From Octopus sinensis (taxonomy: Eukaryota), in the NCBI RefSeq assembly GCF_006345805.1, contig NC_043010.1, positions 7,440,001-7,504,000 on the forward strand: 64,000 nucleotides of DNA, in the 5' to 3' direction. Made by a program: the position numbers and the translations under genes. Positions within the stretch are counted from its first letter, which is position 1, and every line of letters starts with the position of its first letter. Below, in pieces: positions 38,134-61,009 of this stretch. The notes beneath the pieces were generated by a model, which saw nothing but the letters and a program-made list of their open reading frames with translations, was not told where the DNA came from and made no database searches.

Positions 38134-38590
38134 TTCATAGGTATGTGTGGGTGTGGTGTGTATGTATATATATGCACACAGCTATATAATATATATATAT
38201 ATATAAATATATTGTGCATTGTTTCATAATGGAGTGGTCAACAAAAAGTATTCCATCTAGTGAGATATAAATATTATCTGATAAACACAATATATATTTT
38301 TTTTATGAGTTACTAATAGTTTTATGCAACTCAGACAGTGTTTTATAACATGTCTGGAGCCTACACGTAATCCTCAGGCACCAAATGTGTTATAAAATAC
38401 TGTCTCAGTCGTTTTCATCACATGAAAACTATTGTAGCTCAAAAATAATAGATTGTGTTTATTAGATAATATATTATATATTATATATATTATATTATAT
38501 ATATATATATTATATATAACATAATATAATATATATATATATATATTTGAGTAGTGATATGAATTACCTTATTAAGGACAATTCGAAAGA

Positions 38591-38809
38591 TAACCGATAC
38601 CTGGGTAGCAAATTCACATCTCAGAAAGAACATGGTGAAGCTAAGTCCCTAGGGCATAGACTACGTGTCTTCGTGCGGAAATTTGTATGTTTATTTTAAA
38701 ACTTATAAGTATATGAAAGAATGGAGTTGAACGATAGTTAACAATATCCTTTGTCAAGAATAAAGGATATTTGTTAACTAATTCTTTCATATACTTATAA
38801 TTTTAAAAT
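38591..38809. mobile_element. Second copy of the Penelope-like fragment, hairpin-ended, hammerhead core absent
   Basis: Shares TAACCGATACCTGGGTAGCAAATTCAC...GAAAGAATGGAGTTGAACGA with the 54.2-kb copy and folds back on itself at 38690-38809. Confidence 0.6.
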
Positions 38810-38885: not shown

Positions 38886-39392
38886 GGAGGCGCAATGGCC
38901 CAGTAGTTAGAGCAGCGGACTCGCACTCATAGGATCATGGTTTCGATTTCCAGACTGGACATTGTGAGTGTTTATTGAGTGAAAACACCTAAAGCTCCAC
39001 GAGGCTCTAGCAGGGGCTGGTGGTGAACCCTGCTGTACTCTTTCACCACAACTTTCTCTCACTCTTTCTTCCTGTTTCTGTTGTACCTGTAATTTCAAAG
39101 GGCCCGCCTTGTCACACTCTGTGTCATGCTGAATCTCCCTAAGAACTACGTTAAGGGTACATGTGTCTGTGGAGAGCTCAGCCACTTTCATGTTAATAAA
39201 TGAGCTGCGACGTCACTGGTGCCAAGCTGTATTGGCCCCCTTTGCCTTTCCCTTGGATAACATTGGTGGTGTGGAGAGGGGAGGCCAGTATGCATGGGCG
39301 ACTGCTGGTCTTCCATAAACAACCTTGCCCAGACTTGTGCCTCGAAGGGTAACTTTCTAGGTGCAATCTCGTGGTCATTCATGACCGAAGGT
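38886..39392 (+). mobile_element. SINE family E (about 500 bp, tRNA-like head)
   Basis: GGAGGCGCAATGGCCCAGTAGTTAG...GGTTTCGATTTCC head followed by a GC-richer body; single copy in the window. Confidence 0.6.
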
Positions 39393-49221: not shown

Positions 49222-49998
49222 GATAAGAAAAAGTTTGTAAATATGGAGAGTAGAATGTATGGATGCACAAGAGATATAGAGGGCTCAAAAACAAGATGAC
49301 AAGGAAAAGAATTTCAAATGTAGCAGGTGCACAGTAATTAGCAGTTAGCACACCTAAGAAATTCATTCAAATGCTCAGAAGGTTTCCTAGAAGTTGTTCA
49401 TAGTGTTGATGATATAATTAGCAATAGATTCTTCTGAAAATATAATAGGCAGAGAAAGAATGAGCTGGAAAAATTTGAGGCACCTTTTACTTCTACTGAT
49501 AAAAAATAGGATTCTATCTGAGTGATGTGCAGATTGTATAATACATGTATACAAAGTTTGAGTGGATAGGTGCAAACCATGGAGAATAAATATGGAAAAT
49601 GTAGGAAAACTGGAATGAAGCCAGGTGGGTATGTTTTCTGAATGTGGAATGTTTAGTGCAATATGAAGAACAGAGTACAACTGAGTACAAAGGAGCAGTG
49701 AGAAAAGCTTATCATAAAAGAAATCAGCTTTAGTATGCAAGAGAGATGTGATGGTATGAACATGTGAAAGATGATGTTTGATAGATGTGATCCAAGTGAA
49801 AGAAACCTTTGGAAAACAAAGACCTTGTGCCTTACCCAAGGACATAATGCATCACACAGCATAGGACTGAATCCACAACCTAAACATGAGCCCAACATCC
49901 TAACAAGGATGTTAATAGTGGACTTAGGCAGACAGCAACGGCATAGAAGCTTACCATATGCAGACTCACATACATACATACATGCATACATACATACA

Positions 49999-50029
<31 letters not shown>

Positions 50030-50485
50030 GTATATAAATGTGTGTGTGTGTATTGATAAATTAGTTATGATTTTTTTAGAATCTAGGCACATCAACATGT
50101 ATGACACCAGAACTAACAAAAGACCATAACAAAAAGTTCATAATGAGATACAACAACCATGAAGGTATCACATGTTGGTAGGATAGTGCAAATATGTAGA
50201 TATGTAAGCACCAAATGCAATATAAACTGCAGATCCAACTTAATCTTGGTTCCAGGTGCAGTGTAGGATGAACACAAATGGAGTTTAAAATTTACAACAG
50301 CTGTTTCGGTAGAATTTTATGTATTCATAGATTACATCACAACATAAACGAGTGACGTAAAACCTCAATGATGATATATCCAACAAAAGACATATCAGAA
50401 TTATTCTATGATGTGATCTATGAATACATCAATAAAATTCTACTGAAACAACTGTTGTAAATTTTAAACCTCATTTGTGTTCTGT

Positions 50486-50547
<62 letters not shown>

Positions 50548-50550
<3 letters not shown>

Positions 50551-52177
50551 CTTAGAATAACTTAGAAAGGTTTTTGGCCAGTATTGGCCCAGGCCATGTC
50601 TAACTTAATAGCACCACCTGGCGAAGTCTTTCAGTTCAGGATTTGGGCACCAAGGCCCATTCGAGCAGAGAGTTATTGTTTGCGGAGACATATCCGGGTG
50701 TGGGTGGTTTGTCCGGTACTGTTTGAAGGAATTTGTCCAAAGACTTCTTGAATTTTGTGTGGTCAGTTTCTTTTTTGACGTGTCCTGGTGTAATGTTGTG
50801 CCGTATTGTCGTTATGTGATGCGATTTAGATTTTTGTTGTGGACGGATGGCACGTGGTCCAAGCCTTGGATGCATTTTGAAGGTGATGCCAACATCATTC
50901 GGACAGTGCTGATGGAATATTTTCCACATCATACAGATAATGTAGCGTTCACGGCGTCGTTGGAGTGAATACAATTTCAGCTTCTCTAGTCTACCCCAGT
51001 AGTCAAGGTCTGACATGCCATCTATCTTTTTTGTGATTGACCTTTGGGGAGCTTCAATTCTCATAATATTTTGTTTTGTGTAGGGAGACCACAGTGGACA
51101 GCAGTATTCAAGGTGGGGTCGGGCAAAAGTGGAGAAGAGAAGGATAATAGCGTGGGAATCTCTCGACTGGAAGGTTCTGAGAATCCAGGAACACATTCTG
51201 CGGGCCATGTCAACTTTGCTGCTTATATGTGTAGCCCAGCTTATGTTGTTGTCCACTGTTACTCCCAGGTCTCTGATGTTGTTGGATGCCATGAGAATTT
51301 CTCCAGATGGAAGAGAGTATGGGAGTTTCAGAGCGTCCTCCCTTCCAAAGTGGATCAGTTCGAATTTGTCTTCATTTAGCAACATGTTGTTCTTTTCCGC
51401 CCATTGGACAACAGCCAGTAGGTCTGACTGAAGGTTTATTCGGTCATCCACGCCATTGATGACCTTCTGGAGCTTGGAATCATCAGCGAAGGTTCTGATG
51501 TTGCTGTGTTTGATGGTGTCAGTAATATCATTTATGTAGATGATGAAGAGAAGTGGGCCCAACACAGTGCCTTGTGGGACACCACTGCTGACTTTGGCTG
51601 GGCTGGATTTGACTCCTTCGACTACAACATGTTGGGTTCTGTTAGAGAGGAAGCACTTGATCCATTGTAGCAGCTTTCCAGTGACACCAATATTGGACAG
51701 CTTTCTCAGAAGGATCTTATGATCAACCCTGTCAAAGGCCTTGCTGAAATCAAGGTAGATGACATCAGTGTTGGAACCCTCTCCCAAGGCTCTCAAAATG
51801 TCATCAAAATGATGCAGTAGCTGCGTCAGGCAATCTCTCCCATTACGGAATCCATGCTGGTTGGGGTTCAGCATATTATGACTCTCAAGGAAGTGAGTCA
51901 TACGCGATCTCAGCACCCTCTCAAATACCTTGATGATATGAGAGGTGAGTGAGATTGGACGGTAATTCACGGCAAGCGATTTGTTTCCTTTTTTGAAAAC
52001 TGGGACAACAGACTGGGATAGAAGGTCTTCTGGTATATATCCAGCATCCAATGAGTTCCGCCACAGATTGGCTAGAGGGGGTGCAAGTTGGTTTTGACAC
52101 ATCTTCAAGACACAAGCAGGGAACCTATCGGGACCTACTGCTGAATTATGCTTCATTTCCTTTAGGAAAATACGCAC
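50548..52177 (-). mobile_element. 5'-truncated non-LTR retrotransposon (CR1/L2/Jockey group) with intact RT ORF 52177-50636
   Basis: 513-aa stop-free ORF with YRPISLTS, NQHGFR, YLDFSKAFDRV, SGVPQGTVLGPLLFIIYIND, FADD and PHLEYC motifs; about 90-nt 3'UTR ending in (TTCTAAGTTA)x2 next to a (TA)n tract; no endonuclease domain. Confidence 0.93.
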
Positions 52178-52615
52178 ACTTACATGGTTTTAATATAATT
52201 TTTAATATATCAACCGGTTTCACTATTGTTATTCACGATATAATGTTTAATTTATATGAAAATTAATTTTTTCTTAAGAAGGAATTTGGTCCATGTTGTT
52301 TGTGATGAAATATATATATATATATATATGCATATATATGTGTGTGTGTGTAAAATCATCACCATCATCATCGCTATCATACAATATTCATGCTTGCATG
52401 GGTCAGTTGGAATTTGTTAAGACATATTCTCTACAGCCAGATGCCCTTCCTTTTGCCAACTCTCACTTGTTTCCAAGCTCGGTAATATTTCTCTATGACA
52501 TACTTTCACAGAAGACTAGAAGCAAGCAACATCATTTGCACGTTGGTGCTGCTCATTTGCAATCATTACATGATGTGAGGACTCAAACACATATACACAC
52601 ATCTTCATCACTTAA

Positions 52616-53287: not shown

Positions 53288-54200
53288 TATATATACATAT
53301 ATACATGTGTGTGTGTGTATACATATATGTATACACAAACACAGACTCTTATGTACACCCATCCACACACACACAAAAAGAAAGATACATATACATTTAT
53401 TATGCTTACACATATAGATGGATAGATTGGCAGACAGATAGTCAGAGCACTCACTGATTTATATCAATGACATGTAGTCTATGACAGGAACACTGAAAAA
53501 CTGATGTTTTTTTGATTAAGTACTCAATATGCTATTTAATTGTTTCACACAAGTTATACAGAATACTTGTCTCCTTTGCCGTCATAAAACACAGCGAACC
53601 AGTGACAGGCCCTTTTGAAACCCCTAATCAATGTTATTAATGTTTGCTAATTGTGATATAAAGTAATATAATTGAATTAAAATTGATAAAAAAGATATAA
53701 TATTGAACAAGACATTCCAGAGAAACAATAAAAATAGCATGTCTTTAATAAAGATGGAAAGTAATTTCATAAAAACATCAAAACAAGCTTGATACTAAAC
53801 CATATATGGAACTGACAGAATTTGCTATTTTCTGGTTTAAGTGAATCTTTTTTAAGCTTAGATTACATAAAAAATATCATTAAATTATATGGAGGATGTT
53901 TGTGTGCCTGTTTGTGCATATTTGATATTATAAAGAATTGTGTTAAGAACTAGTAAAATATTTGAGCTTCCTTAAAATAAAAGATTGGTGGTGGTAAAAA
54001 CTTTCAAAACCTCTTTTAAATTAATATCTCTATATTTCAGCTAATTCTTCAGGGGTTGCCTTTACCATTCTGCATACATACATACATGCATACAGACATA
54101 TGAACATCTAGCTATCTATCTATCTATCTATCTGTCTATATATATATATATATATATATATAAGTAGTTGAATGAATTATCTTAGTATGGATAATTCGGT

Positions 54201-54521
54201 TAACCGATACCTGGGTAGCAAATTCACGTCAGAAAAATACGGTTGAAGCTACATGCCAAGGGCAGAGATCACGTGCTTTCGTGTGGAAATTTGTGTGTTT
54301 TTTTAATACAAATAAATGAAAGAATGGAGTTGAACGACGATTTAACAAAATTCCTTTATTCTCGACATATGTTTCGAAGGCTGCATATTCCTAATTTTGA
54401 AGGAATAAGGGGTGCATTATGCCGCCTTCTCATCAGGAAAGACAAGGAACTTATGTCAGCATCAAGATGAACAAAAACAAAGGAATTTTGTTAAATCGTC
54501 GTTCAACTCCATTCTTTCATT

Positions 54522-54523
<2 letters not shown>
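54201..54523 (-). mobile_element. Penelope-like element terminal fragment with inverted arms (54313-54357 / 54479-54523)
   Basis: About 45-bp inverted repeat flanks a hammerhead motif. 54201-54357 is homologous to 38591-38755. Hammerheads in terminal repeats are a known feature of Penelope-like elements. Confidence 0.65.
54360..54440 (-). ncRNA. Minimal type I hammerhead ribozyme motif
   Basis: Minus strand: CUGAUGA (54436-54430); stem II GAAGGCGGCAUA/UAUGCAGCCUUC (11 of 12 bp); GAAAC (54375-54371); palindromic helix III AC-AUAU-GU; GUC triplet ending at 54364; stem I 4 bp (UUUC/GAGA). Confidence 0.75.
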
Positions 54524-54553
<30 letters not shown>

Positions 54554-54825
54554 ATAATATATATGTATATATATAATATATATGTATATATATATATATG
54601 TATATTATTATTATTATTATTTAACAGGAATGCTATTAACAGAGACTAAGAAGTTTTGGCCAAACAGTCTTAATCTGGGTGAAACTTCAACGTCCCTGTC
54701 ACTACTATTCTTTTTAGAGAATAATAAATTTGTACAAAAATTATGAAGTAACCCTTTAGATTGATGTAAAATTGTTTTTCTTATAACTAAACATAAGACA
54801 AACATTAATATACATTGTACGTATG

Positions 54826-54870
<45 letters not shown>

Positions 54871-55008
54871 ATATATGTATACTACCACTTGATTTTTTTT
54901 AACTTCTAACAAAATTTTACATGATATTCAAAAATATTTTACCACCTGATCAAAAATATTTATATAAAAATATATATTTATGTATGTGTGCGTATATGTA
55001 TATATATA

Positions 55009-55053
<45 letters not shown>

Positions 55054-55541
55054 CACACATATATATATTATTCTTTAACAAGAATACTATTAATAGTGAC
55101 TAAGAAGTTTTGGCCAAAGTGTCTTAATCTAGGCGAAAATTCAAAGTCCCTAGGTCCCTGTCAATACTATTCTTGTCAAAGAATACTAAATTTGTACTCT
55201 ACAAAAGTATGGGGTTAACCTTCAGATTAAGGTAAAATTGTTTGTTTGTTTTTTTTGTTATAACTAAAGATAAAACAACCATTAAAATACATCGTATGTA
55301 TATATATATATATTTATATATATTTATATATGTATGTATATATTTATTATATATATATATATATATATCACCACTTCATTTTCTTTTACTTCTGACAAAC
55401 TTTTACATGATATTCAAAAATATTTTACCAACTGATCTCAAATATTTAAAGAAATATATATGTATGCATAAATATATATATATATATATATATAAACCTA
55501 TATATATATATATATATATATGTGTGTACATACATACATAT

Positions 55542-55616
<75 letters not shown>

Positions 55617-55678
55617 CATACATATATATATGTATGTATGTATACAGACAATTAAAATATAAAAATAATATCACCTAC

Positions 55679-58105
55679 CTGGTGCATTCCCTCGGTTGTT
55701 GCCTGACAAGGAACTCCAATAGCCAGGTTAGTTCTTTTATGTGTTAGATCTTGTCTAGAATGAAGCTCTTCTCTTGGTCCTAATGTGGATGTTTTTTCAT
55801 TTTGTAAACGTGCCAAACTTGCCACAGGTACATCATAATCAGATGACATTTGTTCACAAAAATATTGAGTTTGTCTACTTTGATCCACAAATTTGCTTGA
55901 ATGATCTACACCACTACTACACCGGATATTCCTTTGATTATGTCTCTGAACGATGCATACTGTAATTGAAACTACGAGGACAAGGGATACAGTTACAGCT
56001 GCAATTACAATGATTATGAATAGATTTATGTGGATCATGTCATCTGATTGTTGATCTACAGCTGTGAACATCTTGGATGTTGTATTGCTAACAGTGAGTG
56101 TTAAAAATAACGTGGTCGTTGTTGACAAAACTGGTGTGCCACTATCTTTCACAACTAATTTTAATTCATATGATCCTGCATCATTTTGGTAAACTGGTCG
56201 AGAAAAAGACAGGATACCAGAATGTGGGTTGACTGTAAATAACTGTTTTTCATTACCTCCAAGTATTTCAAACCGAAGGAAAGCATTTACATGACTGTCT
56301 CTGTCAGAGGCCCTAAGAACTGTAATATCGTTTTTACTTTTTGGATGGTAGTGAACATCTAAATTAGAAGGGTTAACACTTGGGAATATAAAATAGGGAG
56401 GATTGTCATTTTCATCCATGACTTCAACAATAACAGTTGCAGTGTTGTTTAGTGAGGGTGTTCCATTGTCTTTGACTAAAACTTTAAATTTGTAGATTTT
56501 TTGTTGTTCATGATCTAATGATAAAGTGGTAGAAATAAATCCAAAATTAGAAATCTTAAAAGGCAGTACATGTTTATCACTACTCAACAAAGTAAAGGTT
56601 AGCTGACCTCCAAGTCCCAGATCAGGGTCACTAGCATTAATGAATCCAACAGGAAAATTTGACTTTTCATTCTCATATGTCAAAAACTTGAACGTGTCTT
56701 TAGTAAAGTGTGGTTGTACGTCGTTGACATCCATTACTTGGATAGAGAATTTTCTCTCTGTCCTTTGAGATGGTAATCCATTGTCTTTACAAGTGATAGT
56801 AAAATCAATATGGTTTTTTTTCTCTCTATCAACCGGATTCTTTACGGTTAACTTGTATTTCTTTTTGCCTAAATTCTGAAGCTGGAATTTTTCATGGAAA
56901 AGGTCACAGGTAACTTCCCCATTCTGTCCAATATCATTGTCTGTGACCTTAACGTAAGCAATAAAGCTGCCAACTTCAATATCCTCAGAAATAGTGGCTG
57001 TATTCCCAGTTGACTCTGAGAAGTTTACATCTATTGTAGGTGCATTGTTTTGTTGGTTGATAACATTTACTAAAGCCATAGCGATAGAACTTAACGGTGG
57101 ACTGCCTCCGTCTTGAGCTTCGATGAATAACTTATATGTCAGCTTTTTCCTTGAAGTCATTTTTTTTTTAATGAAAATATCTCCCGTTGTCTTATCTAGT
57201 TCAAAATGATTTTTAACAAGATCTGATGTCTTGGAGCTAAAATGATATAAAATTTTACTATTTTTTCCTGTATCTGAATCCACTGCATGTACTGTAATAA
57301 CAGGTTTTTCAATCTGATGTTGATTGTTCACGGAAACATTATACACATTTTGGGTAAATACAGGGGAGTTATCATTAACATCACTTACTGATATGTTCAC
57401 ATTTAATATTCCTTCTTTTGTAGGTGAGCCTTCATCTCTGGCAATAACTTGAAGCATAAAAGAATCTTTCATTTCACGGTCAAGTTCTTTTTCCAAGGTT
57501 ATTCCAAGTGAGTATGAATTATCAAGTCTCTTAGAGAGAGCTAAACTGAATAAGTTGTCTTTATTTTTTGACAAGAAATAAGTGATTTTGGAATTTTTCA
57601 AACCAATATCCTTGTCAATGGCGTTTGGAATTGATCTGGTGGTTCCTTTCTTATCTCCTTCAGAAAACTGAAGGTTTACCTGATTGCTAAAAAATTCAGG
57701 CTGATGATCGTTAATGTCTTCTACAACTACTTTAATCTCTAATATTTTTATGAAAGATTTTTTCTTTCTTACTGCAATATCTACCATTTTGAAGCATTCT
57801 GTATTATATTTACAGAGAGACTCAGCATCCAGTGTCTGTGCAGTGTACAACTTCCCTCTTTTGGAGACATTAAAGAGCTGGGAGTTATTACTTATGTCTT
57901 TTTCTAGTTGACTGAAGCGTATTAGATTGCGATCTATCAAGGATATACTGTCCATCAGATTGGTATCAACTCCAATATCACCTATGTAAGTTCCAGGACT
58001 TTTGCTTTCTTTCAGATAATAAATGAAATCCACACATTCCGCCATATGCAATACATGCAGTAATGCGAATACCTGTATCAACATTATTCCAAAGAGAGTC
58101 ATCAT
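55679..58105 (-). CDS. Pcdh: Protocadherin, large first coding exon (signal peptide, EC1-EC6, TM, proximal cytoplasmic region)
   Basis: 828-aa open frame 58138-55652; first ATG at 58105 ([16 protein letters not shown] signal peptide). Six cadherin repeats with DINDHQP, LDRE, DVNDNSP, DNDIG, VDRE, DVNDVQP, DPDLG, DENDNPP, DRDS motifs; [31 protein letters not shown]. Frame runs into donor CAC CAG|GTAGGT at 55679/55678 (phase 0). Family-level name only. Confidence 0.96.
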
Positions 58106-58192
58106 CCACAATGAAATAAAGTAATATGATGTCGTCACCTTTTTTTTTTATATATACTTCTAATTTTATTTGAAATGATGAATTAAAAGACT
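58106..58192 (-). other. Likely 5'UTR part of the large protocadherin exon, starting at a splice acceptor
   Basis: Minus strand reads atttctctttcag|agtc with AG at 58194-58193, implying an upstream non-coding exon that I could not locate. Confidence 0.45.
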
Positions 58193-58768
58193 CTGAAAGA
58201 GAAATATTTTGTTTTAGAAATCACAAATAATATATATTTTGCAGGGTAAACTGACATAAACTTAATCGGTTAAAAAATTCATTGAAATTGATTTAATAAA
58301 AGTTCCCCTCCAGAAATATTGCTAAGACTTGAAGGAGTCATTTCAATTTCCCATCATGCAACCCTTTTGTATAGCTTGGAGCTTCAGCTATTCAAGTTAT
58401 TATGGCCAATAACTGTTCAATACTAAAATGAAAGAGCTTGTTAGCCAAGCCAGACATTGCTGTATTCTTTTATATTTTCATAGCTATCTTTATACTAGTG
58501 AAGGAAGTAGTAGTGGTAGTAGTAGTAGTAGCAACTCTGTTGTTGTTGTTGTTGTTGTTGTTGTTGCTGATATCAATAACTATGCTGATAACAACAACAA
58601 TCACAAGAGTTTTAGAAAAATATTACTGAGAATTCATATGTCGAAAACATAAAAAGAGATAAATAAATCTATGCTATTGAAACGGGAGGTGGGGAAAATA
58701 AATAAAATTAAATAATAAACAGAAGAAAAACAATATCATTAATGCTACTATTACCATCATTAATAATA

Positions 58769-58828
<60 letters not shown>

Positions 58829-61009
58829 TGATGATAATAATAATAATAATGATAATAATAATAATGATAATGAAAATGATGATGAAGGTAAAAATTGTAG
58901 TAAATAATAATAGTAAATAATAATAATCATCATCATTATTATTATCATAAAAAATAAACAATAACAACTACAACAATAGCAAATAACAATATGAACAAAA
59001 CAGAACAAAACAAGAAAAAACATAAGCTAAATAATATATATATGAGGTAAAAAAAAAAAAAATGCTAAACAAAAATCATATTTCTGATTATAGCTACAAC
59101 AACAACAACAATCACAACAACAACAACTGTAACAAATATAGCAGCAGCAGCAAAATTAACAACAGATAACAAAAGTTTAAATAAAATAGTGATATGAAAT
59201 AATCTGAAGATGCAGTGCTTCGGTGTACTGATAAAAGCAATATTCTGTACTGTAGTGAGTGGGTAGCGTAGGGGAAAAAAACATAGATTTATGGAAGTAA
59301 TCAGGGAAATAAGAAATATTATTGGCAAGTGAGGTTGTTGTTGTTGTTTATTTTTTATTTTTTTTTTTTAGTTATTTTTGTATTTATATTATTATTTTTT
59401 TTTATTGTTATTGTTGTTGTTGTTGTTGTTGCTTATGTTTATTTATTTGGTTTGTTTTGGATATTTTTGATATAATTTTTTTTTCTTCTCTCCTTTATTT
59501 CTTTTTAGTTTTTTTTCTTTTTTCCTGTGTTTCTTCCTTTCTTTCTTTGCTTTTTTTTTCTTTTTCTTTTTTCTTTTTTTTGCCGTTCGTTCGTTCTTGC
59601 TTTTGATGAGGAAACTGTAGAGGGAGGCAGGCGGACAGGCAGACAGACAGGCAGGCAGTGACGCTATATATAATATGATAGACTGATGCATAAGTATTTG
59701 AAATTATTTCGGAAAAAGAAAAGAAGTGGTGGGGGTTGGTGGGTGGGGGAGGTGGTGCGGAGGGAGGAGGAGGGGGTGGAATTGGGGGGGGGGGTAGAGA
59801 AACATAGTTCATACATTGAAAAATGATAACCAACTTCAGTGAATAAGAGAAGTAATCACCAGAAAACAATATTAAAATGTCCCCAGCCACCAGGGCTGCA
59901 CACAGCTATTACTGCTTCTGCTGCTCATGTTCTTTATTTGTTGTTGTTGTTGTTGTTGTAGCTGTTACTACTGACGCTGTTACCGCCATAGCCAGTGTTA
60001 CCATCATCGTCATCATCATCATCGTTATTGCCATCCTCACCTCTCTACCTTTATCTGTCATGTGAAAACATGATTTAAAACAAACTCGCAAAGAAAGTAG
60101 GAAGAGAAGAAAATCTTTTCCTCTACGTTTTCTTCCTCCAAATCATCTCACCCTCTCTCTATATATATCTCTCTCTCCCTTGCTCTTTCCCTTTCTCACT
60201 TTGTCTGTCTTTCTTCTAACTTTCTAACTGAAATGATTAGATGACAGAGAGCGAGTGAGAGAGAGAGATAGAGTGAGGAAATGAAAAAATGTATGCGATG
60301 GAGTGGAGTGTGTGTATAGCTATTCCTGTTTAACCCCAGGTTGTTCTGATTAAGCAGACTCATAGACAAAAAAACAGACTAGCCATGACCATCCAGTCTG
60401 ATTTACCTTACATCCAACAACTAGGACTACGGTATCCAATGTGTTCTTTCATTTCACAAAAACAAAAGTATAATTTAAAGCGGACTTCGCTGCTATTTCT
60501 AGTTCTTTGAGTGACTGCACAGAGGCTCAGAGACTGAGGTGAGATGTGTATACTTGTCATGTAAGGTAAAGAAAACATCGATATGTGTATGTGCTTGTAT
60601 ATGCTTCTATGTGTATTACTATGTGTGACAGTATATGTGTGTGTATATGAGAGTTTGTGAGAATGTGTGGGCATGATAGCATGTCAGTATATAGGAGTGA
60701 TTTGTATGTGTGTGTGTGTGTGTGGTATGGTAGATGTAAGGTAGTGCAAATGTAAGGTAGTGCAAATGTGAGTGTATGCACTGTTGTGCATGTGAAAGAA
60801 ATAACATTATGGGATTGAAATTGAGAAAATAGTTGAAATGATATTACATATTATAGAAAGCTGAGTCCCATTTCAACTAAATAATTAACTTTTTGTTGTC
60901 TATATATGAACAGGAACAGAAGCATAAATATAGGGAATGCAAGATGCGGTAAATACTTGCATATATTTCTATGTGTGCTTATATATATATATGTGTGTGT
61001 GTATATATA

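What the first reader, a model, noticed from the sequence alone, without database searches (positions are those of the whole stretch)
54360..54440. Minimal hammerhead ribozyme on the sense strand of the protocadherin intron
Seen: all core nucleotides present (CUGAUGA, GAAA, GUC), an 11/12-bp stem II, a palindromic ACAUAUGU helix III and a short 4-bp stem I. It lies about 1.3 kb after the large-exon donor on the transcribed strand. Established: minimal hammerheads with palindromic helix III occur in Penelope-like element repeats and can cleave as dimers; intronic hammerheads exist in amniotes. Inference: co-transcriptional cleavage after 54364 could uncouple the ectodomain exon from distal exons or favour short isoforms. 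The weak stem I may make it inactive.
Basis: partly seen in the sequence, partly recalled or inferred. Interest (0 to 1): 0.78.

Follow-up and report, generated by a model that had tools for sequence, protein, structure and literature searches.

The report
Retroposon-borne hammerhead ribozyme in octopus intron
The hammerhead ribozyme motif is real and descends from a ribozyme-carrying mobile-element family of octopus genomes, but it arrived in this protocadherin intron with a young, species-specific transposon insertion, so it is probably ordinary transposon cargo and not a regulator of the gene.

Summary
On the minus strand, which is the protocadherin sense strand, 54440-54360 carries CUGAUGA, GAAA and GUC, an 11/12-bp stem II, the ACAUAUGU palindrome and a 4-bp stem I. 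No motif as good appeared in 400 shuffles.

It is not a chance motif. Two diverged homologues in Octopus bimaculoides loci keep CUGAUGAG and GAAACAUAUGU unchanged while stems I and II change on both sides (86% of cells paired; 29-46% in slid controls).

The motif sits in the loop of a perfect 46-bp foldback. The foldback forms the 5' end of a ~365-bp non-coding interspersed repeat (54163-54526) inserted in a (TA)n microsatellite.

The element is absent from the orthologous O. bimaculoides site. A second window copy (38550-38795) lacks the ribozyme. Copies are 5'-truncated, with 5'-to-5' inverted arms, which is the insertion architecture described for Penelope-like elements.

Best reading: a minimal hammerhead of the Penelope-like-element type, carried by a non-autonomous retroposon. 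Its role is in the element's own RNA.

A host role is unlikely. The insertion is lineage-specific, no dimer partner lies nearby, and the active fold is 5-15 kcal/mol above the predicted minimum. Slow intronic hammerheads are reported not to block splicing.

No Rfam model matched, and no autonomous partner was found. This is a new member of a known kind.

The parts
54360..54440 (-). Complete minimal hammerhead motif, from the 5' strand of stem I to the 3' strand of stem I.
   Evidence: Sequence read. It is the only descriptor hit in the window. It scores 99 bits with family model R1.
54430..54436 (-). Catalytic box CUGAUGA (C3-A9).
   Evidence: Invariant in copies A, C and F.
54376..54429 (-). 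Stem II with its long internal extension. It has 12 positions, 11 of them paired, and an inner hairpin UAUUCCU/AGGAAUA. The block UUAUUCCUUC is conserved among copies.
54365..54375 (-). G12-A13-A14 plus helix III ACAUAUGU, an exact palindrome. A monomer would form 2 bp plus an AUAU loop; a dimer could form 8 bp.
   Evidence: GAAACAUAUGU is invariant in the three copies. The cofolded dimer is -50.0 kcal/mol against 2 x -21.3 for two monomers.
54363..54364 (-). Predicted scissile bond, 3' of C17 (54364) and 5' of G1.1 (54363).
   Evidence: Follows from standard hammerhead numbering applied to the sequence. Cleavage itself was not tested.
54479..54524 (+). Outer (inverted) arm of the foldback. 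It is the reverse complement of the 46 nt that follow the ribozyme.
   Evidence: 46/46 match to 54312-54357, with none expected by chance.
54312..54357 (-). Inner arm, called 'T46' here: the 46 nt directly 3' of the ribozyme on the sense strand. Related copy F ends at the equivalent of its 3' boundary.
54163..54311 (-). 3' body of the repeat, containing GTGAATTTGCTACCCAGGTATCGGTTAAC. It is shared with copies B, C, D and E and ends at a (TA)n tract.
54163..54526 (-). Whole insertion (copy A): inverted arm, 36-nt leader, hammerhead, T46 and body. It is flanked on both sides by (TA)n and is absent from the O. bimaculoides orthologous site.
   Evidence: nhmmer E=1e-87.
38550..38795 (-). Second copy of the same repeat family (copy B). 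It has the body plus a foldback with only a 9-nt loop (GTCAAGAAT on the + strand) and no catalytic core.
55679..58105 (-). Context: the large ectodomain and transmembrane exon of the host protocadherin gene. Its donor lies at about 55678.

Best explanation
The motif is a genuine hammerhead of the minimal type associated with Penelope-like elements (PLEs). It has a long helix II, a 4-5 bp helix I and a tiny palindromic helix III. It is inherited as part of a short, non-coding, interspersed retroposon family of Octopus genomes.

On the ribozyme-sense strand the family unit reads: leader, hammerhead, a ~46-nt segment (T46), a ~150-200-nt body, and then a TA-rich microsatellite target.

The window copy is a 5'-truncated insertion. 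Its 5' end carries an inverted copy of T46, so the ribozyme sits in the 121-nt loop of a perfect 46-bp foldback. The element entered a (TA)n tract in intron 1 of a protocadherin gene, in sense orientation, after the split from O. bimaculoides.

Shown:
- the motif and its strand;
- the family membership;
- conservation of the catalytic blocks with compensatory stem changes;
- the foldback;
- the empty orthologous site.

Inferred:
- The ribozyme serves the element's own RNA. It would process element transcripts, most plausibly as dimers when two copies meet, and would help define a 5' end just upstream of T46. Three of five body-containing copies begin within about 25 nt of the cleavage site.
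- The family is mobilised by a PLE-type reverse transcriptase/endonuclease that primes on both target strands, which would explain the 5'-to-5' inverted arms.
- In this intron the copy is essentially a passenger. Its most likely effect on the pre-mRNA is formation of a ~50-bp double-stranded hairpin, not self-cleavage.
For: **Motif and chance.**

**Homologues.**
- L003 22849-22926(+), copy C, lies in an element only 64% identical to copy A over 275 nt.
- L002 34366-34442(+), copy F, is the second homologue.
- Both keep CUGAUGAG and GAAACAUAUGU unchanged.

**Covariation.** 86% of cells pair, against 29-46% when partners are slid. Seven of 19 pairs change on both sides, for example stem I GAGA/UUUC against AGAAG/UUUCU, and G-C to A-U at 10.5-11.5.

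**Family model.** Model R1 finds exactly these three sites in 512 kb (108, 99 and 82 bits). The next best hit scores 16.6 bits.

**Repeat family.** Five copies occur in 462 kb of non-N sequence. All end in TA-rich microsatellites and have variable 5' ends. Copies A, B and D carry inverted arms; C and E do not.

**Empty orthologous site.**
- Window 53390-54162 aligns to L001 13538-12791.
- Window 55616-58856 aligns to L001 12492-9274.
- The (TA)n between them is not interrupted by the element.

**Age.** The arms are 46/46 identical.

**Literature.**
- Minimal hammerheads in PLE repeats have a long helix II, a 4-5 bp helix I, G10.1-C11.1 and a palindromic helix III. Most occur as single motifs in truncated copies, some as close pairs on opposite strands (PMC4209133).
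- PLE insertions are 5'-truncated, often with an adjacent inverted 5'-truncated copy. A (TA)n target bias is described for the Naiad clade, which lacks canonical hammerheads, and a microsatellite bias was hypothesised for Neptune PLEs (PMC8557442).
- A PLE enzyme cleaves and extends both target strands and starts reverse transcription at two internal sites (PMC11167929).
- PLEs were recently active in O. vulgaris (PMC13282606).

**PLEs in the sampled loci.**
- A PLE RT/EN remnant ending in a (TA)n(GA)n tract lies in L002.
- Another hammerhead-like repeat in 5'-to-5' inverted arrangement lies in L004.
Against: - No autonomous PLE sharing sequence with this family was found. The one PLE remnant seen has no hammerhead of this family in its 3' region.
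- No hammerhead model of Rfam matches.
- The unpaired nucleotide between A9 and 10.1, which is typical of PLE minimal hammerheads, is absent.
- The inverted arms end at the T46 boundary and not at the 3' end of the body. The simple two-strand priming picture does not predict this unless T46 is an alternative start site. Copy F and a 27-nt remnant in L001 hint at that.
- Only three ribozyme-bearing copies were available, one of them with a G:G mismatch at 10.1-11.1.
- In all three copies the competent fold is 5-9 kcal/mol above the predicted minimum.
- Self-cleavage was not tested.
- The arm-like remnant at the O. bimaculoides site leaves open an ancestral insertion later lost there.
Confidence: 0.65

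Rival explanations
1. Exapted intronic ribozyme. Co-transcriptional self-cleavage 1.3 kb into intron 1 would uncouple the ectodomain exon from the distal exons or favour short isoforms of this protocadherin.
For: The motif is in sense orientation in the intron and its catalytic core is intact. Fast ribozymes placed in introns can abort splicing (PMC2995048).
Against: - The element is absent from the orthologous site of O. bimaculoides, and its arms are perfect, so it is young and lineage-specific.
- No dimer partner lies in 64 kb.
- The competent fold is 4.8-14.9 kcal/mol above the predicted minimum, and the stem I strand is captured by the foldback.
- Monomeric minimal hammerheads showed no detectable activity (PMC4209133).
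- Slow hammerhead cleavage in an intron did not reduce splicing (PMC2995048).
- In vertebrates, hammerhead-bearing repeats are depleted from introns (bioRxiv 10.64898/2026.07.22.740005).
Confidence: 0.05
2. Foldback DNA transposon or MITE. The 46-bp perfect inverted repeats would be terminal inverted repeats of a TA-targeting cut-and-paste element that happens to carry a hammerhead-like sequence.
For: The inverted repeat is a perfect 46 bp, the flanks are TA-rich and the foldback is about 215 bp. Tc1-mariner elements and MITEs are abundant in octopus genomes (PMC13282606).
Against: - The repeated unit extends ~150-200 bp beyond one arm only, and that junction is conserved in five copies.
- Copies C and E have no inverted arm.
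- Loop length varies from 0 to 121 nt, and the loop remnant of copy B is inverted relative to copy A. This fits variable 5' truncation with 5'-to-5' inversion better than fixed termini.
- Target-site duplications cannot be read inside (TA)n.
Confidence: 0.1
3. Non-LTR retrozyme: a tandem-repeat element whose RNA is cut at two hammerheads and ligated into a small circular RNA.
For: - The motif is a type I hammerhead in a short, AT-rich, non-coding repeat of 250-370 nt.
- The body shows a marginal resemblance to a decayed second hammerhead unit (F against body A, 17 of 500 shuffles reach the score).
- Animal retrozymes are proposed to be non-autonomous PLE derivatives. The RNA is predicted to be highly self-paired.
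Against: - No tandem arrangement was seen, and no copy has two intact hammerheads.
- The helix I and II loops do not resemble the canonical loop-loop design of invertebrate retrozymes (PMC7229834).
- The resemblance to a second unit is not significant for four of the five bodies.
Confidence: 0.15
4. Chance resemblance: the boxes and helices arose by accident in AT-rich repetitive DNA.
For: - No Rfam hammerhead model matches.
- Loose descriptor hits occur at 0.18 per shuffled window.
- A scan of a very large metagenome collection with the two boxes gave three hits that lack stem II.
Against: - None of 400 shuffles was as good.
- Two homologues at ~64% overall identity keep both catalytic blocks intact and compensate changes in the stems.
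- The model built from them separates the three sites from everything else by more than 65 bits.
Confidence: 0.03

Closest known systems
Minimal hammerheads of Penelope-like elements (Cervera & De la Pena 2014, PMC4209133), including the variants with a small palindromic helix III described for Drosophila, rotifer, shrimp and mosquito elements.
   Same: - Type I topology, with the full CUGAUGA / GAAA / UH core.
- The G10.1-C11.1 pair.
- A long helix II (6 bp at the base, 12 positions overall) and a short helix I (4-5 bp) without a defined loop 1.
- Helix III reduced to a palindrome, which allows dimers.
- Occurrence mostly as single motifs in truncated, dispersed copies.
- Copies that differ in sequence but compensate in the stems.
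   Different: - There is no unpaired nucleotide between A9 and 10.1.
- Stem II carries a 30-nt internal extension with a conserved UUAUUCCUUC block.
- The motif was not found in a repeat flanking a reverse transcriptase/GIY-YIG ORF. It lies in a short non-coding element whose link to a Penelope-like partner is inferred only from architecture.
Insertion architecture of Penelope-like elements (Craig et al. 2021, PMC8557442; Frangieh et al. 2024, PMC11167929).
   Same: - Strong 5' truncation.
- An inverted 5'-truncated copy abutting the 5' end, giving inverted repeats with the 3' ends outward.
- Insertion into microsatellites. The source describes a (TA)n bias for the Naiad clade, which lacks canonical hammerheads, and a hypothesised microsatellite bias for Neptune.
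- No poly(A) tail.
   Different: - The inverted arm ends at an internal boundary (the end of T46), about 150-200 nt before the 3' end of the long form.
- The described 'tail' is 30-40 bp long.
- No coding element of this family was recovered.
Metazoan non-LTR retrozymes (Cervera & De la Pena 2020, PMC7229834).
   Same: Short (200-400 nt), AT-rich, non-coding repeats with type I hammerheads whose helix III is 1-2 bp plus a palindromic loop. The RNAs are highly self-complementary.
   Different: Retrozymes are tandem arrays with one efficient, canonical hammerhead per unit (6-bp helix I, 4-bp helix II, loop-loop contacts) and give circular RNAs. Here the copies are solitary, and the helices are of the minimal type.
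Conserved intronic hammerheads of amniotes (HH9/HH10 type).
   Same: A hammerhead on the sense strand of an intron of a protein-coding gene.
   Different: Those are conserved at orthologous positions across amniotes and are efficient monomeric ribozymes with tertiary contacts. This one is missing from the orthologous site of the nearest available species and gives no Rfam HH9/HH10 match.

Membership tests
Hammerhead ribozyme (general) | Conserved core: C3-U4-G5-A6-N7-G8-A9, G12-A13-A14, the A15.1-U16.1 pair, and H17 at the cleavage site. | tested here: met
   CUGAUGA lies at 54436-54430, GAA at 54375-54373, A15.1 at 54372, U16.1 at 54365 and C17 at 54364.
Hammerhead ribozyme (general) | Three helices radiating from the core, supported by compensatory changes among relatives. 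| tested here: met
   Among three copies, 86% of cells pair against 29-46% in slid controls, and 7 of 19 pairs change on both sides. The sample is small (n=3), and helix III never varies.
Hammerhead ribozyme (general) | Match to a curated hammerhead covariance model (Rfam Hammerhead_1, _3, _II, HH9, HH10). | tested here: not met
   No match at gathering score in the window and none at E<=10 in 54200-54620. The 54-nt stem II and the minimal helix III probably fall outside those models.
Hammerhead ribozyme (general) | Site-specific self-cleavage 3' of H17. | not testable with these tools
   Only thermodynamic prediction was possible. The competent fold is 4.8 kcal/mol (isolated) to 14.9 kcal/mol (in the foldback) above the predicted minimum.
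Minimal hammerhead of Penelope-like elements | Enlarged helix II (6-8 bp or more) and short helix I (4-5 bp) without a defined loop 1. | tested here: met
   Helix II has 6 contiguous bp and 11 of 12 positions paired. Helix I has 4 bp in copy A, 5 in C and 6 with a bulge in F.
Minimal hammerhead of Penelope-like elements | Conserved G10.1-C11.1 pair. | tested here: met
   G-C in copies A and C. Copy F has G:G and is probably a decayed copy.
Minimal hammerhead of Penelope-like elements | Unpaired nucleotide between A9 and 10.1. | tested here: not met
   G10.1 follows A9 directly in all three copies. A different hammerhead-like repeat in L004 does have this nucleotide.
Minimal hammerhead of Penelope-like elements | Palindromic positions 15.2-16.2 and loop 3, allowing an intermolecular helix III. 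| tested here: met
   ACAUAUGU is an exact palindrome, invariant in the three copies. The cofolded dimer is 7.4 kcal/mol below two monomers.
Minimal hammerhead of Penelope-like elements | Location in the terminal repeat of an element encoding a reverse transcriptase plus GIY-YIG endonuclease, or in a truncated derivative of one. | tested here: inconclusive
   - No such ORF lies next to copies A, C or F.
- The RT at 50636-52177 is LINE-like.
- One PLE remnant in L002 has no sequence of this family.
- The insertion architecture fits a truncated derivative.
Non-LTR retrozyme | Head-to-tail tandem repeats with a hammerhead in each unit, giving unit-length linear and circular RNA. | tested here: not met
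   All six family copies seen are solitary, and none has two intact hammerheads. Circular RNA could not be tested.
MITE / foldback DNA transposon | Terminal inverted repeats at both ends of the mobile unit, flanked by a target-site duplication. | tested here: not met
   The repeated unit continues ~150-200 bp beyond one arm in five copies, and two copies lack the inverted arm. Duplications are unreadable within (TA)n.
Conserved intronic hammerhead of a host gene | Presence at the orthologous position in related species. | tested here: not met
   The O. bimaculoides ortholog (L001) has the flanks at 89-97% identity but not the element. Only a 27-nt arm-like remnant is there.

The most novel reading that the evidence does not exclude
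The young, sense-oriented insertion would be a functional species-specific switch. The hammerhead would cleave the nascent protocadherin pre-mRNA, either alone once the foldback is opened or as a dimer with transcripts of other family copies. Alternatively, the perfect ~50-bp intronic hairpin would recruit editing or dicing enzymes. Either route would change the isoform output of this one member of the expanded octopus protocadherin cluster relative to the sister species.
Probability: 0.05. Interest if true: 0.7.

Novelty: new member of a known kind. Interest (0 to 1): 0.3.

Why it matters
Minimal hammerheads are known to be scattered in large numbers through invertebrate genomes as cargo of Penelope-like elements. 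This finding adds an octopus family to that picture. My literature searches found no paper describing hammerheads in cephalopods.

The case is a clean example of three things:
- how such a motif can be told apart from chance, using homologous copies with invariant catalytic boxes and compensated stems;
- how quickly these motifs enter neural genes;
- how an apparent 'intronic ribozyme' can be shown to be a recent passenger by looking at the empty orthologous site.

The family's structure is worth a specialist's look. It has a short form ending at T46, a long form with a further ~150-200 nt, and 5'-to-5' inverted arms that end at the T46 boundary. This may bear on the two reverse-transcription start sites and the double-strand priming recently shown for a Penelope-like enzyme.

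For protocadherin biology the finding probably does not matter.

Tried and rejected
- **Rfam scans** at gathering score and at E<=10 gave no hammerhead hit.
- **Exact-pattern scans of metagenome contigs.** The arm sequence gave nothing. The two catalytic boxes gave three contigs carrying the same unrelated sequence without a stem II, about the number I estimate would arise by chance.
- **The window's own genome could not be reached.** The exon's ORF product is not on record. The nearest record is the O. bimaculoides ortholog at 88-97% nucleotide identity, so the window comes from a sister species.
- **LINE RT ORF as a handle.** I used the ORF 50636-52177 to fetch more DNA of the same species, but the best database relatives are only 55-62% identical. 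The ORF is L1/R2-like, not Penelope-like.
- **Search for an octopus Penelope-like protein.** I used a query written from my memory of typical PLE RT/EN motifs. It retrieved many PLE proteins (about 58% identity), but none from octopus among the 120 listed. Used as tblastn queries, they found one PLE remnant in L002 that is unrelated to this family.
- **Failed look-ups.** Five of twelve look-ups returned no DNA: gene range too long (P0003, P0004, P0007) or not on record (P0002, P0008).
- **Pfam scans.** Scans of every other window ORF of at least 120 codons showed no transposase, endonuclease or further RT.
- **Body as a decayed second hammerhead unit.** This was marginal for one pair (17 of 500 shuffles) and not significant for the others.
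- **Orthologous site of copy B.** It could not be judged because of an N gap and rearrangements in L001.
- **ARAGORN** found no tRNA-like gene in the window.
Full report
**1. The observation**

The motif lies on the minus strand of the window.

- CUGAUGA is at 54436-54430.
- Stem II runs from G10.1 (54429) to C11.1 (54376).
- GAA is at 54375-54373.
- Helix III, ACAUAUGU, is at 54372-54365.
- C17 is at 54364.
- Stem I is GAGA (54363-54360) paired with UUUC (54440-54437).

The variable positions also carry the commonest natural letters (U7, G10.1-C11.1, C15.2-G16.2, C17).

The minus strand is the sense strand of the host gene. ORF 55652-58138(-) is a protocadherin ectodomain exon (Pfam Cadherin, E=2e-72). 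It is 99% identical to O. bimaculoides 'putative protocadherin beta-18'. The alignment ends at ...EGMHQ followed by GTAGGT at about 55678, so the predicted cleavage site is about 1.31 kb into the intron.

**2. Chance**

I used a generic descriptor: CUGANGA, stem II of at least 3 bp, GAAA, helix III of at least 2 bp, UH, and stem I of at least 3 bp. It finds only this site in both strands of the window.

In 400 dinucleotide-preserving shuffles it produced 72 loose hits (0.18 per window), and none had helices as long as the real one. My rough extrapolation of about 5e-4 per window would still allow tens of accidental hits in a genome of 2-3 Gb. A single hit is therefore not proof.

No Rfam hammerhead model matched, either at gathering score or at E<=10 in a 421-nt stretch around the motif.

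**3. What surrounds it**

The motif lies between two arms of a perfect inverted repeat, 54312-54357 and 54479-54524 (46/46). As RNA, the 225-nt stretch folds into one long hairpin of -107 kcal/mol, with a z-score of -15.8.

BLAST within the window found a second copy of the arm and of the ~150-200 bp on its left, at 38550-38795. Both copies have the same layout on the + strand: (TA)n, a body containing AACCGATACCTGGGTAGCAAATTCAC, a foldback, then (TA)n. Copy B has only a 9-nt loop and no catalytic core.

The hammerhead is thus part of an interspersed repeat of about 365 bp (54163-54526), not of unique intronic sequence.

**4. Source and ortholog**

The O. bimaculoides locus encoding the nearest protein (L001; CM046614.1 39574227-39659767) is collinear with the window at 88-97% nucleotide identity. 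The window therefore comes from a closely related but different species.

- Window 53390-54162 aligns to L001 13538-12791.
- Window 55616-58856 aligns to L001 12492-9274.
- The 1453 bp between them correspond to only 298 bp in O. bimaculoides.

There the (TA)n tract continues without the element. With roughly 5% divergence per lineage, two 46-nt arms inserted before the split should differ at about four or five positions. They differ at none. The insertion is young and lineage-specific.

One oddity remains. At the orthologous spot O. bimaculoides has 27 nt that resemble the outer part of the arm (21 of 27; 15-31 of 2000 shuffles reach the score). I cannot explain this with confidence.

**5. 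Relatives of the ribozyme**

I fetched five more O. bimaculoides protocadherin loci (L002-L006). With L001 these give 398 kb of non-N sequence.

- **Copy C**, L003 22849-22926(+), sits in an element only 64% identical to copy A over 275 nt. It reads UUUCU-CUGAUGAG-AAGA...UUCUU-CGAAACAUAUGUC-AGAAG.
- **Copy F**, L002 34366-34442(+), has the same boxes, a 12-position stem II with two mismatches (one of them G:G at 10.1-11.1), H17=A, and a 6-bp stem I with a bulge.

In the alignment of the three copies, CUGAUGAG and GAAACAUAUGU are invariant, as is a UUAUU.CUUC block inside stem II.

On the hammerhead structure, 86% of cells form standard pairs, against 29-46% when partners are slid by 1-3 columns. 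Seven of 19 pairs change on both sides.

A covariance model built from the three copies finds exactly these three sites in 512 kb, at 108, 99 and 82 bits. The next best hit scores 16.6 bits.

This is good evidence, from a small sample, that the hammerhead is maintained in the family. It rules out a chance motif.

**6. The family**

A profile of the element finds five body-containing copies in 462 kb: A and B in the window, C and E in L003, and D in L002.

On the ribozyme-sense strand the order is leader, hammerhead, a ~46-nt segment (T46), body, then a TA-rich microsatellite. The T46-body junction is contiguous in all five copies, but the 5' ends differ.

- C extends upstream of the ribozyme without an inverted arm.
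- E starts inside T46.
- A, B and D carry, at their 5' end, an inverted copy of T46. The loops are 121, 9 and about 0 nt.
- The loop remnant of B (GTCAAGAAT) is inverted relative to A. This fits a 5'-to-5' junction of two truncated copies, not a fixed terminal hairpin.
- F ends directly after its T46-like segment at a microsatellite, at the same boundary where the inverted arms of A end.

Variable 5' truncation, 5'-to-5' inverted copies with 3' ends outward, microsatellite targets and the absence of a poly(A) tail are the published hallmarks of Penelope-like element insertions (PMC8557442). A Penelope-like enzyme has been shown to cleave and extend both target strands and to start reverse transcription at two internal sites (PMC11167929).

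Penelope-like elements are abundant and were recently active in octopus (PMC13282606 and PMC8967140). In the sampled loci I found one RT/GIY-YIG remnant ending in (TA)n(GA)n (L002 18032-16920). I also found a different hammerhead-like repeat in ~400-bp inverted arms (L004).

I did not find an autonomous element sharing sequence with this family. The Penelope link therefore rests on the ribozyme type and the architecture.

**7. Does this copy work?**

Published minimal hammerheads of this type were inactive as single motifs and weakly active as dimers or with an artificially extended helix III (PMC4209133).

Here helix III can form only 2 bp plus an AUAU loop in a monomer, and no partner lies within the window.

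ViennaRNA places the competent three-way junction above the minimum in every case.
- Isolated 89-nt motif of copy A: -16.5 against -21.3 kcal/mol.
- Copy A inside the foldback: -92.2 against -107.1 kcal/mol. The extended stem takes GAGAAU, and UCAUC pairs with GAUGA of the core.
- Copies C and F are 9.3 and 5.1 kcal/mol above their minima.

These energies ignore tertiary contacts and co-transcriptional folding, so they lower the expectation of activity but do not exclude it.

**8. Host consequences**

Several points argue against a role in protocadherin expression: the insertion is lineage-specific, no partner is nearby, and the fold is unfavourable. In addition, a slowly cleaving hammerhead inside an intron did not reduce splicing, whereas only a fast ribozyme did (PMC2995048).

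A preprint reports that vertebrate hammerhead repeats are depleted from introns. This suggests that such insertions can be mildly harmful rather than useful.

The most likely physical effect of this copy on the pre-mRNA is a ~50-bp perfect double-stranded hairpin. In a cephalopod neural transcript that would be a plausible substrate for RNA editing. This is my inference and was not tested.

**9. Verdict**

The structural interpretation (a minimal hammerhead of the Penelope-like type) is supported. The regulatory inference is not.

This is a new member of a known kind. I rate interest at about 0.3. It lies mainly in the family's unusual architecture and in the clean demonstration that the motif is recent transposon cargo.

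Noticed in passing
window 54312-54357 / 54479-54524: The perfect 46-bp inverted repeat, extended by about 6 G.U-rich pairs, makes a ~50-bp double-stranded hairpin (-107 kcal/mol, z=-15.8) in the sense transcript of a neural gene. It is a plausible substrate for A-to-I editing or dicing in a cephalopod.
   Followed up: partly
L001 12750-12790 (orthologous to window ~54160-54530): At the empty orthologous site, the O. bimaculoides (TA)n tract holds 'GCATGAAAAGCGGACGTTAAACGACAATGATGATG'. Of its bases, 27 align 21/27 with the outer part of the foldback arm (shuffle p about 0.01). It could be a remnant of an ancestral insertion or an independent tiny insertion of the short form.
   Followed up: partly
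window 54612-55560: A tandem duplication of a ~460-490-bp unit at 80-89% identity. Each unit contains a ~215-bp segment (TTTAACAGGAATGCTATTAACAG...) and a microsatellite. O. bimaculoides has only the ACCACTTCATTTT...TTAAAGAAAT part, once. The 1.45 kb after the exon donor is a hot spot of microsatellite-associated rearrangement.
   Followed up: partly
window 50636-52177 (-): A 513-codon ORF encodes a reverse transcriptase of the LINE type (L1/R2-like by PDB sequence search), in sense orientation in the same intron. Window 49650-52310 corresponds to only ~630 bp in the O. bimaculoides ortholog, so this is probably also a lineage-specific insertion. The best database relatives are only 55-62% identical.
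   Followed up: partly
L004 2661-3060 and 3579-3983: Inverted arms of about 400 bp (90-94% complementary). Each carries a minimal hammerhead-like motif, CUGAUGA-G-GUCA...UGAC-GAAA-GAAC-UC, with the unpaired base after A9. The motifs face outward. One copy has G12 mutated to A. It looks like a 5'-to-5' Penelope-type insertion of a different hammerhead family.
   Followed up: partly
L002 13575-13542 (-): Another minimal hammerhead-like motif: CUGACGA, a 3-bp stem II, the palindromic helix III ACUAGU and a 7-bp stem I. It was not examined further and may be chance.
   Followed up: no
L002 18032-16920 (-): A remnant of a Penelope-like element: the C-terminal part of the RT and a GIY-YIG-like endonuclease with a CxxC linker. 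It ends about 260 bp later in a (TA)n(GA)n microsatellite. No hammerhead of the family studied here lies in its 3' region.
   Followed up: partly
window 38886-38960 (+): Directly after the (TA)n that follows copy B begins a sequence that looks to me like the tRNA-derived head of a SINE (GGAGGCGCAATGGCCCAGTAGTTAGAGCAGCGGACTCGCACTCATAGG...). ARAGORN does not call it a tRNA. Related sequence recurs in L001.
   Followed up: no
L001 23559 and 27412 (+): Two identical copies of ACACA-CUGAUGA-CAGGUUACUAUGCAGAAACCCAGGUC-UGUGU lie inside a repeated element. The boxes and a 6-bp stem I are hammerhead-like, but there is no convincing stem II.
   Followed up: no
window 54163-54311 (-) versus L002 34345-34480: The 3' body of the repeat shows a marginal resemblance to a hammerhead unit (UUCUGACGUGAAUUUGCUACCCAGGUAUC against UUCUGAGGUUCUGCUACCUAGGAAAC of copy F; 17 of 500 shuffles reach the score). 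It may be a decayed second unit of an old partial tandem. The resemblance is not significant for the other copies.
   Followed up: partly
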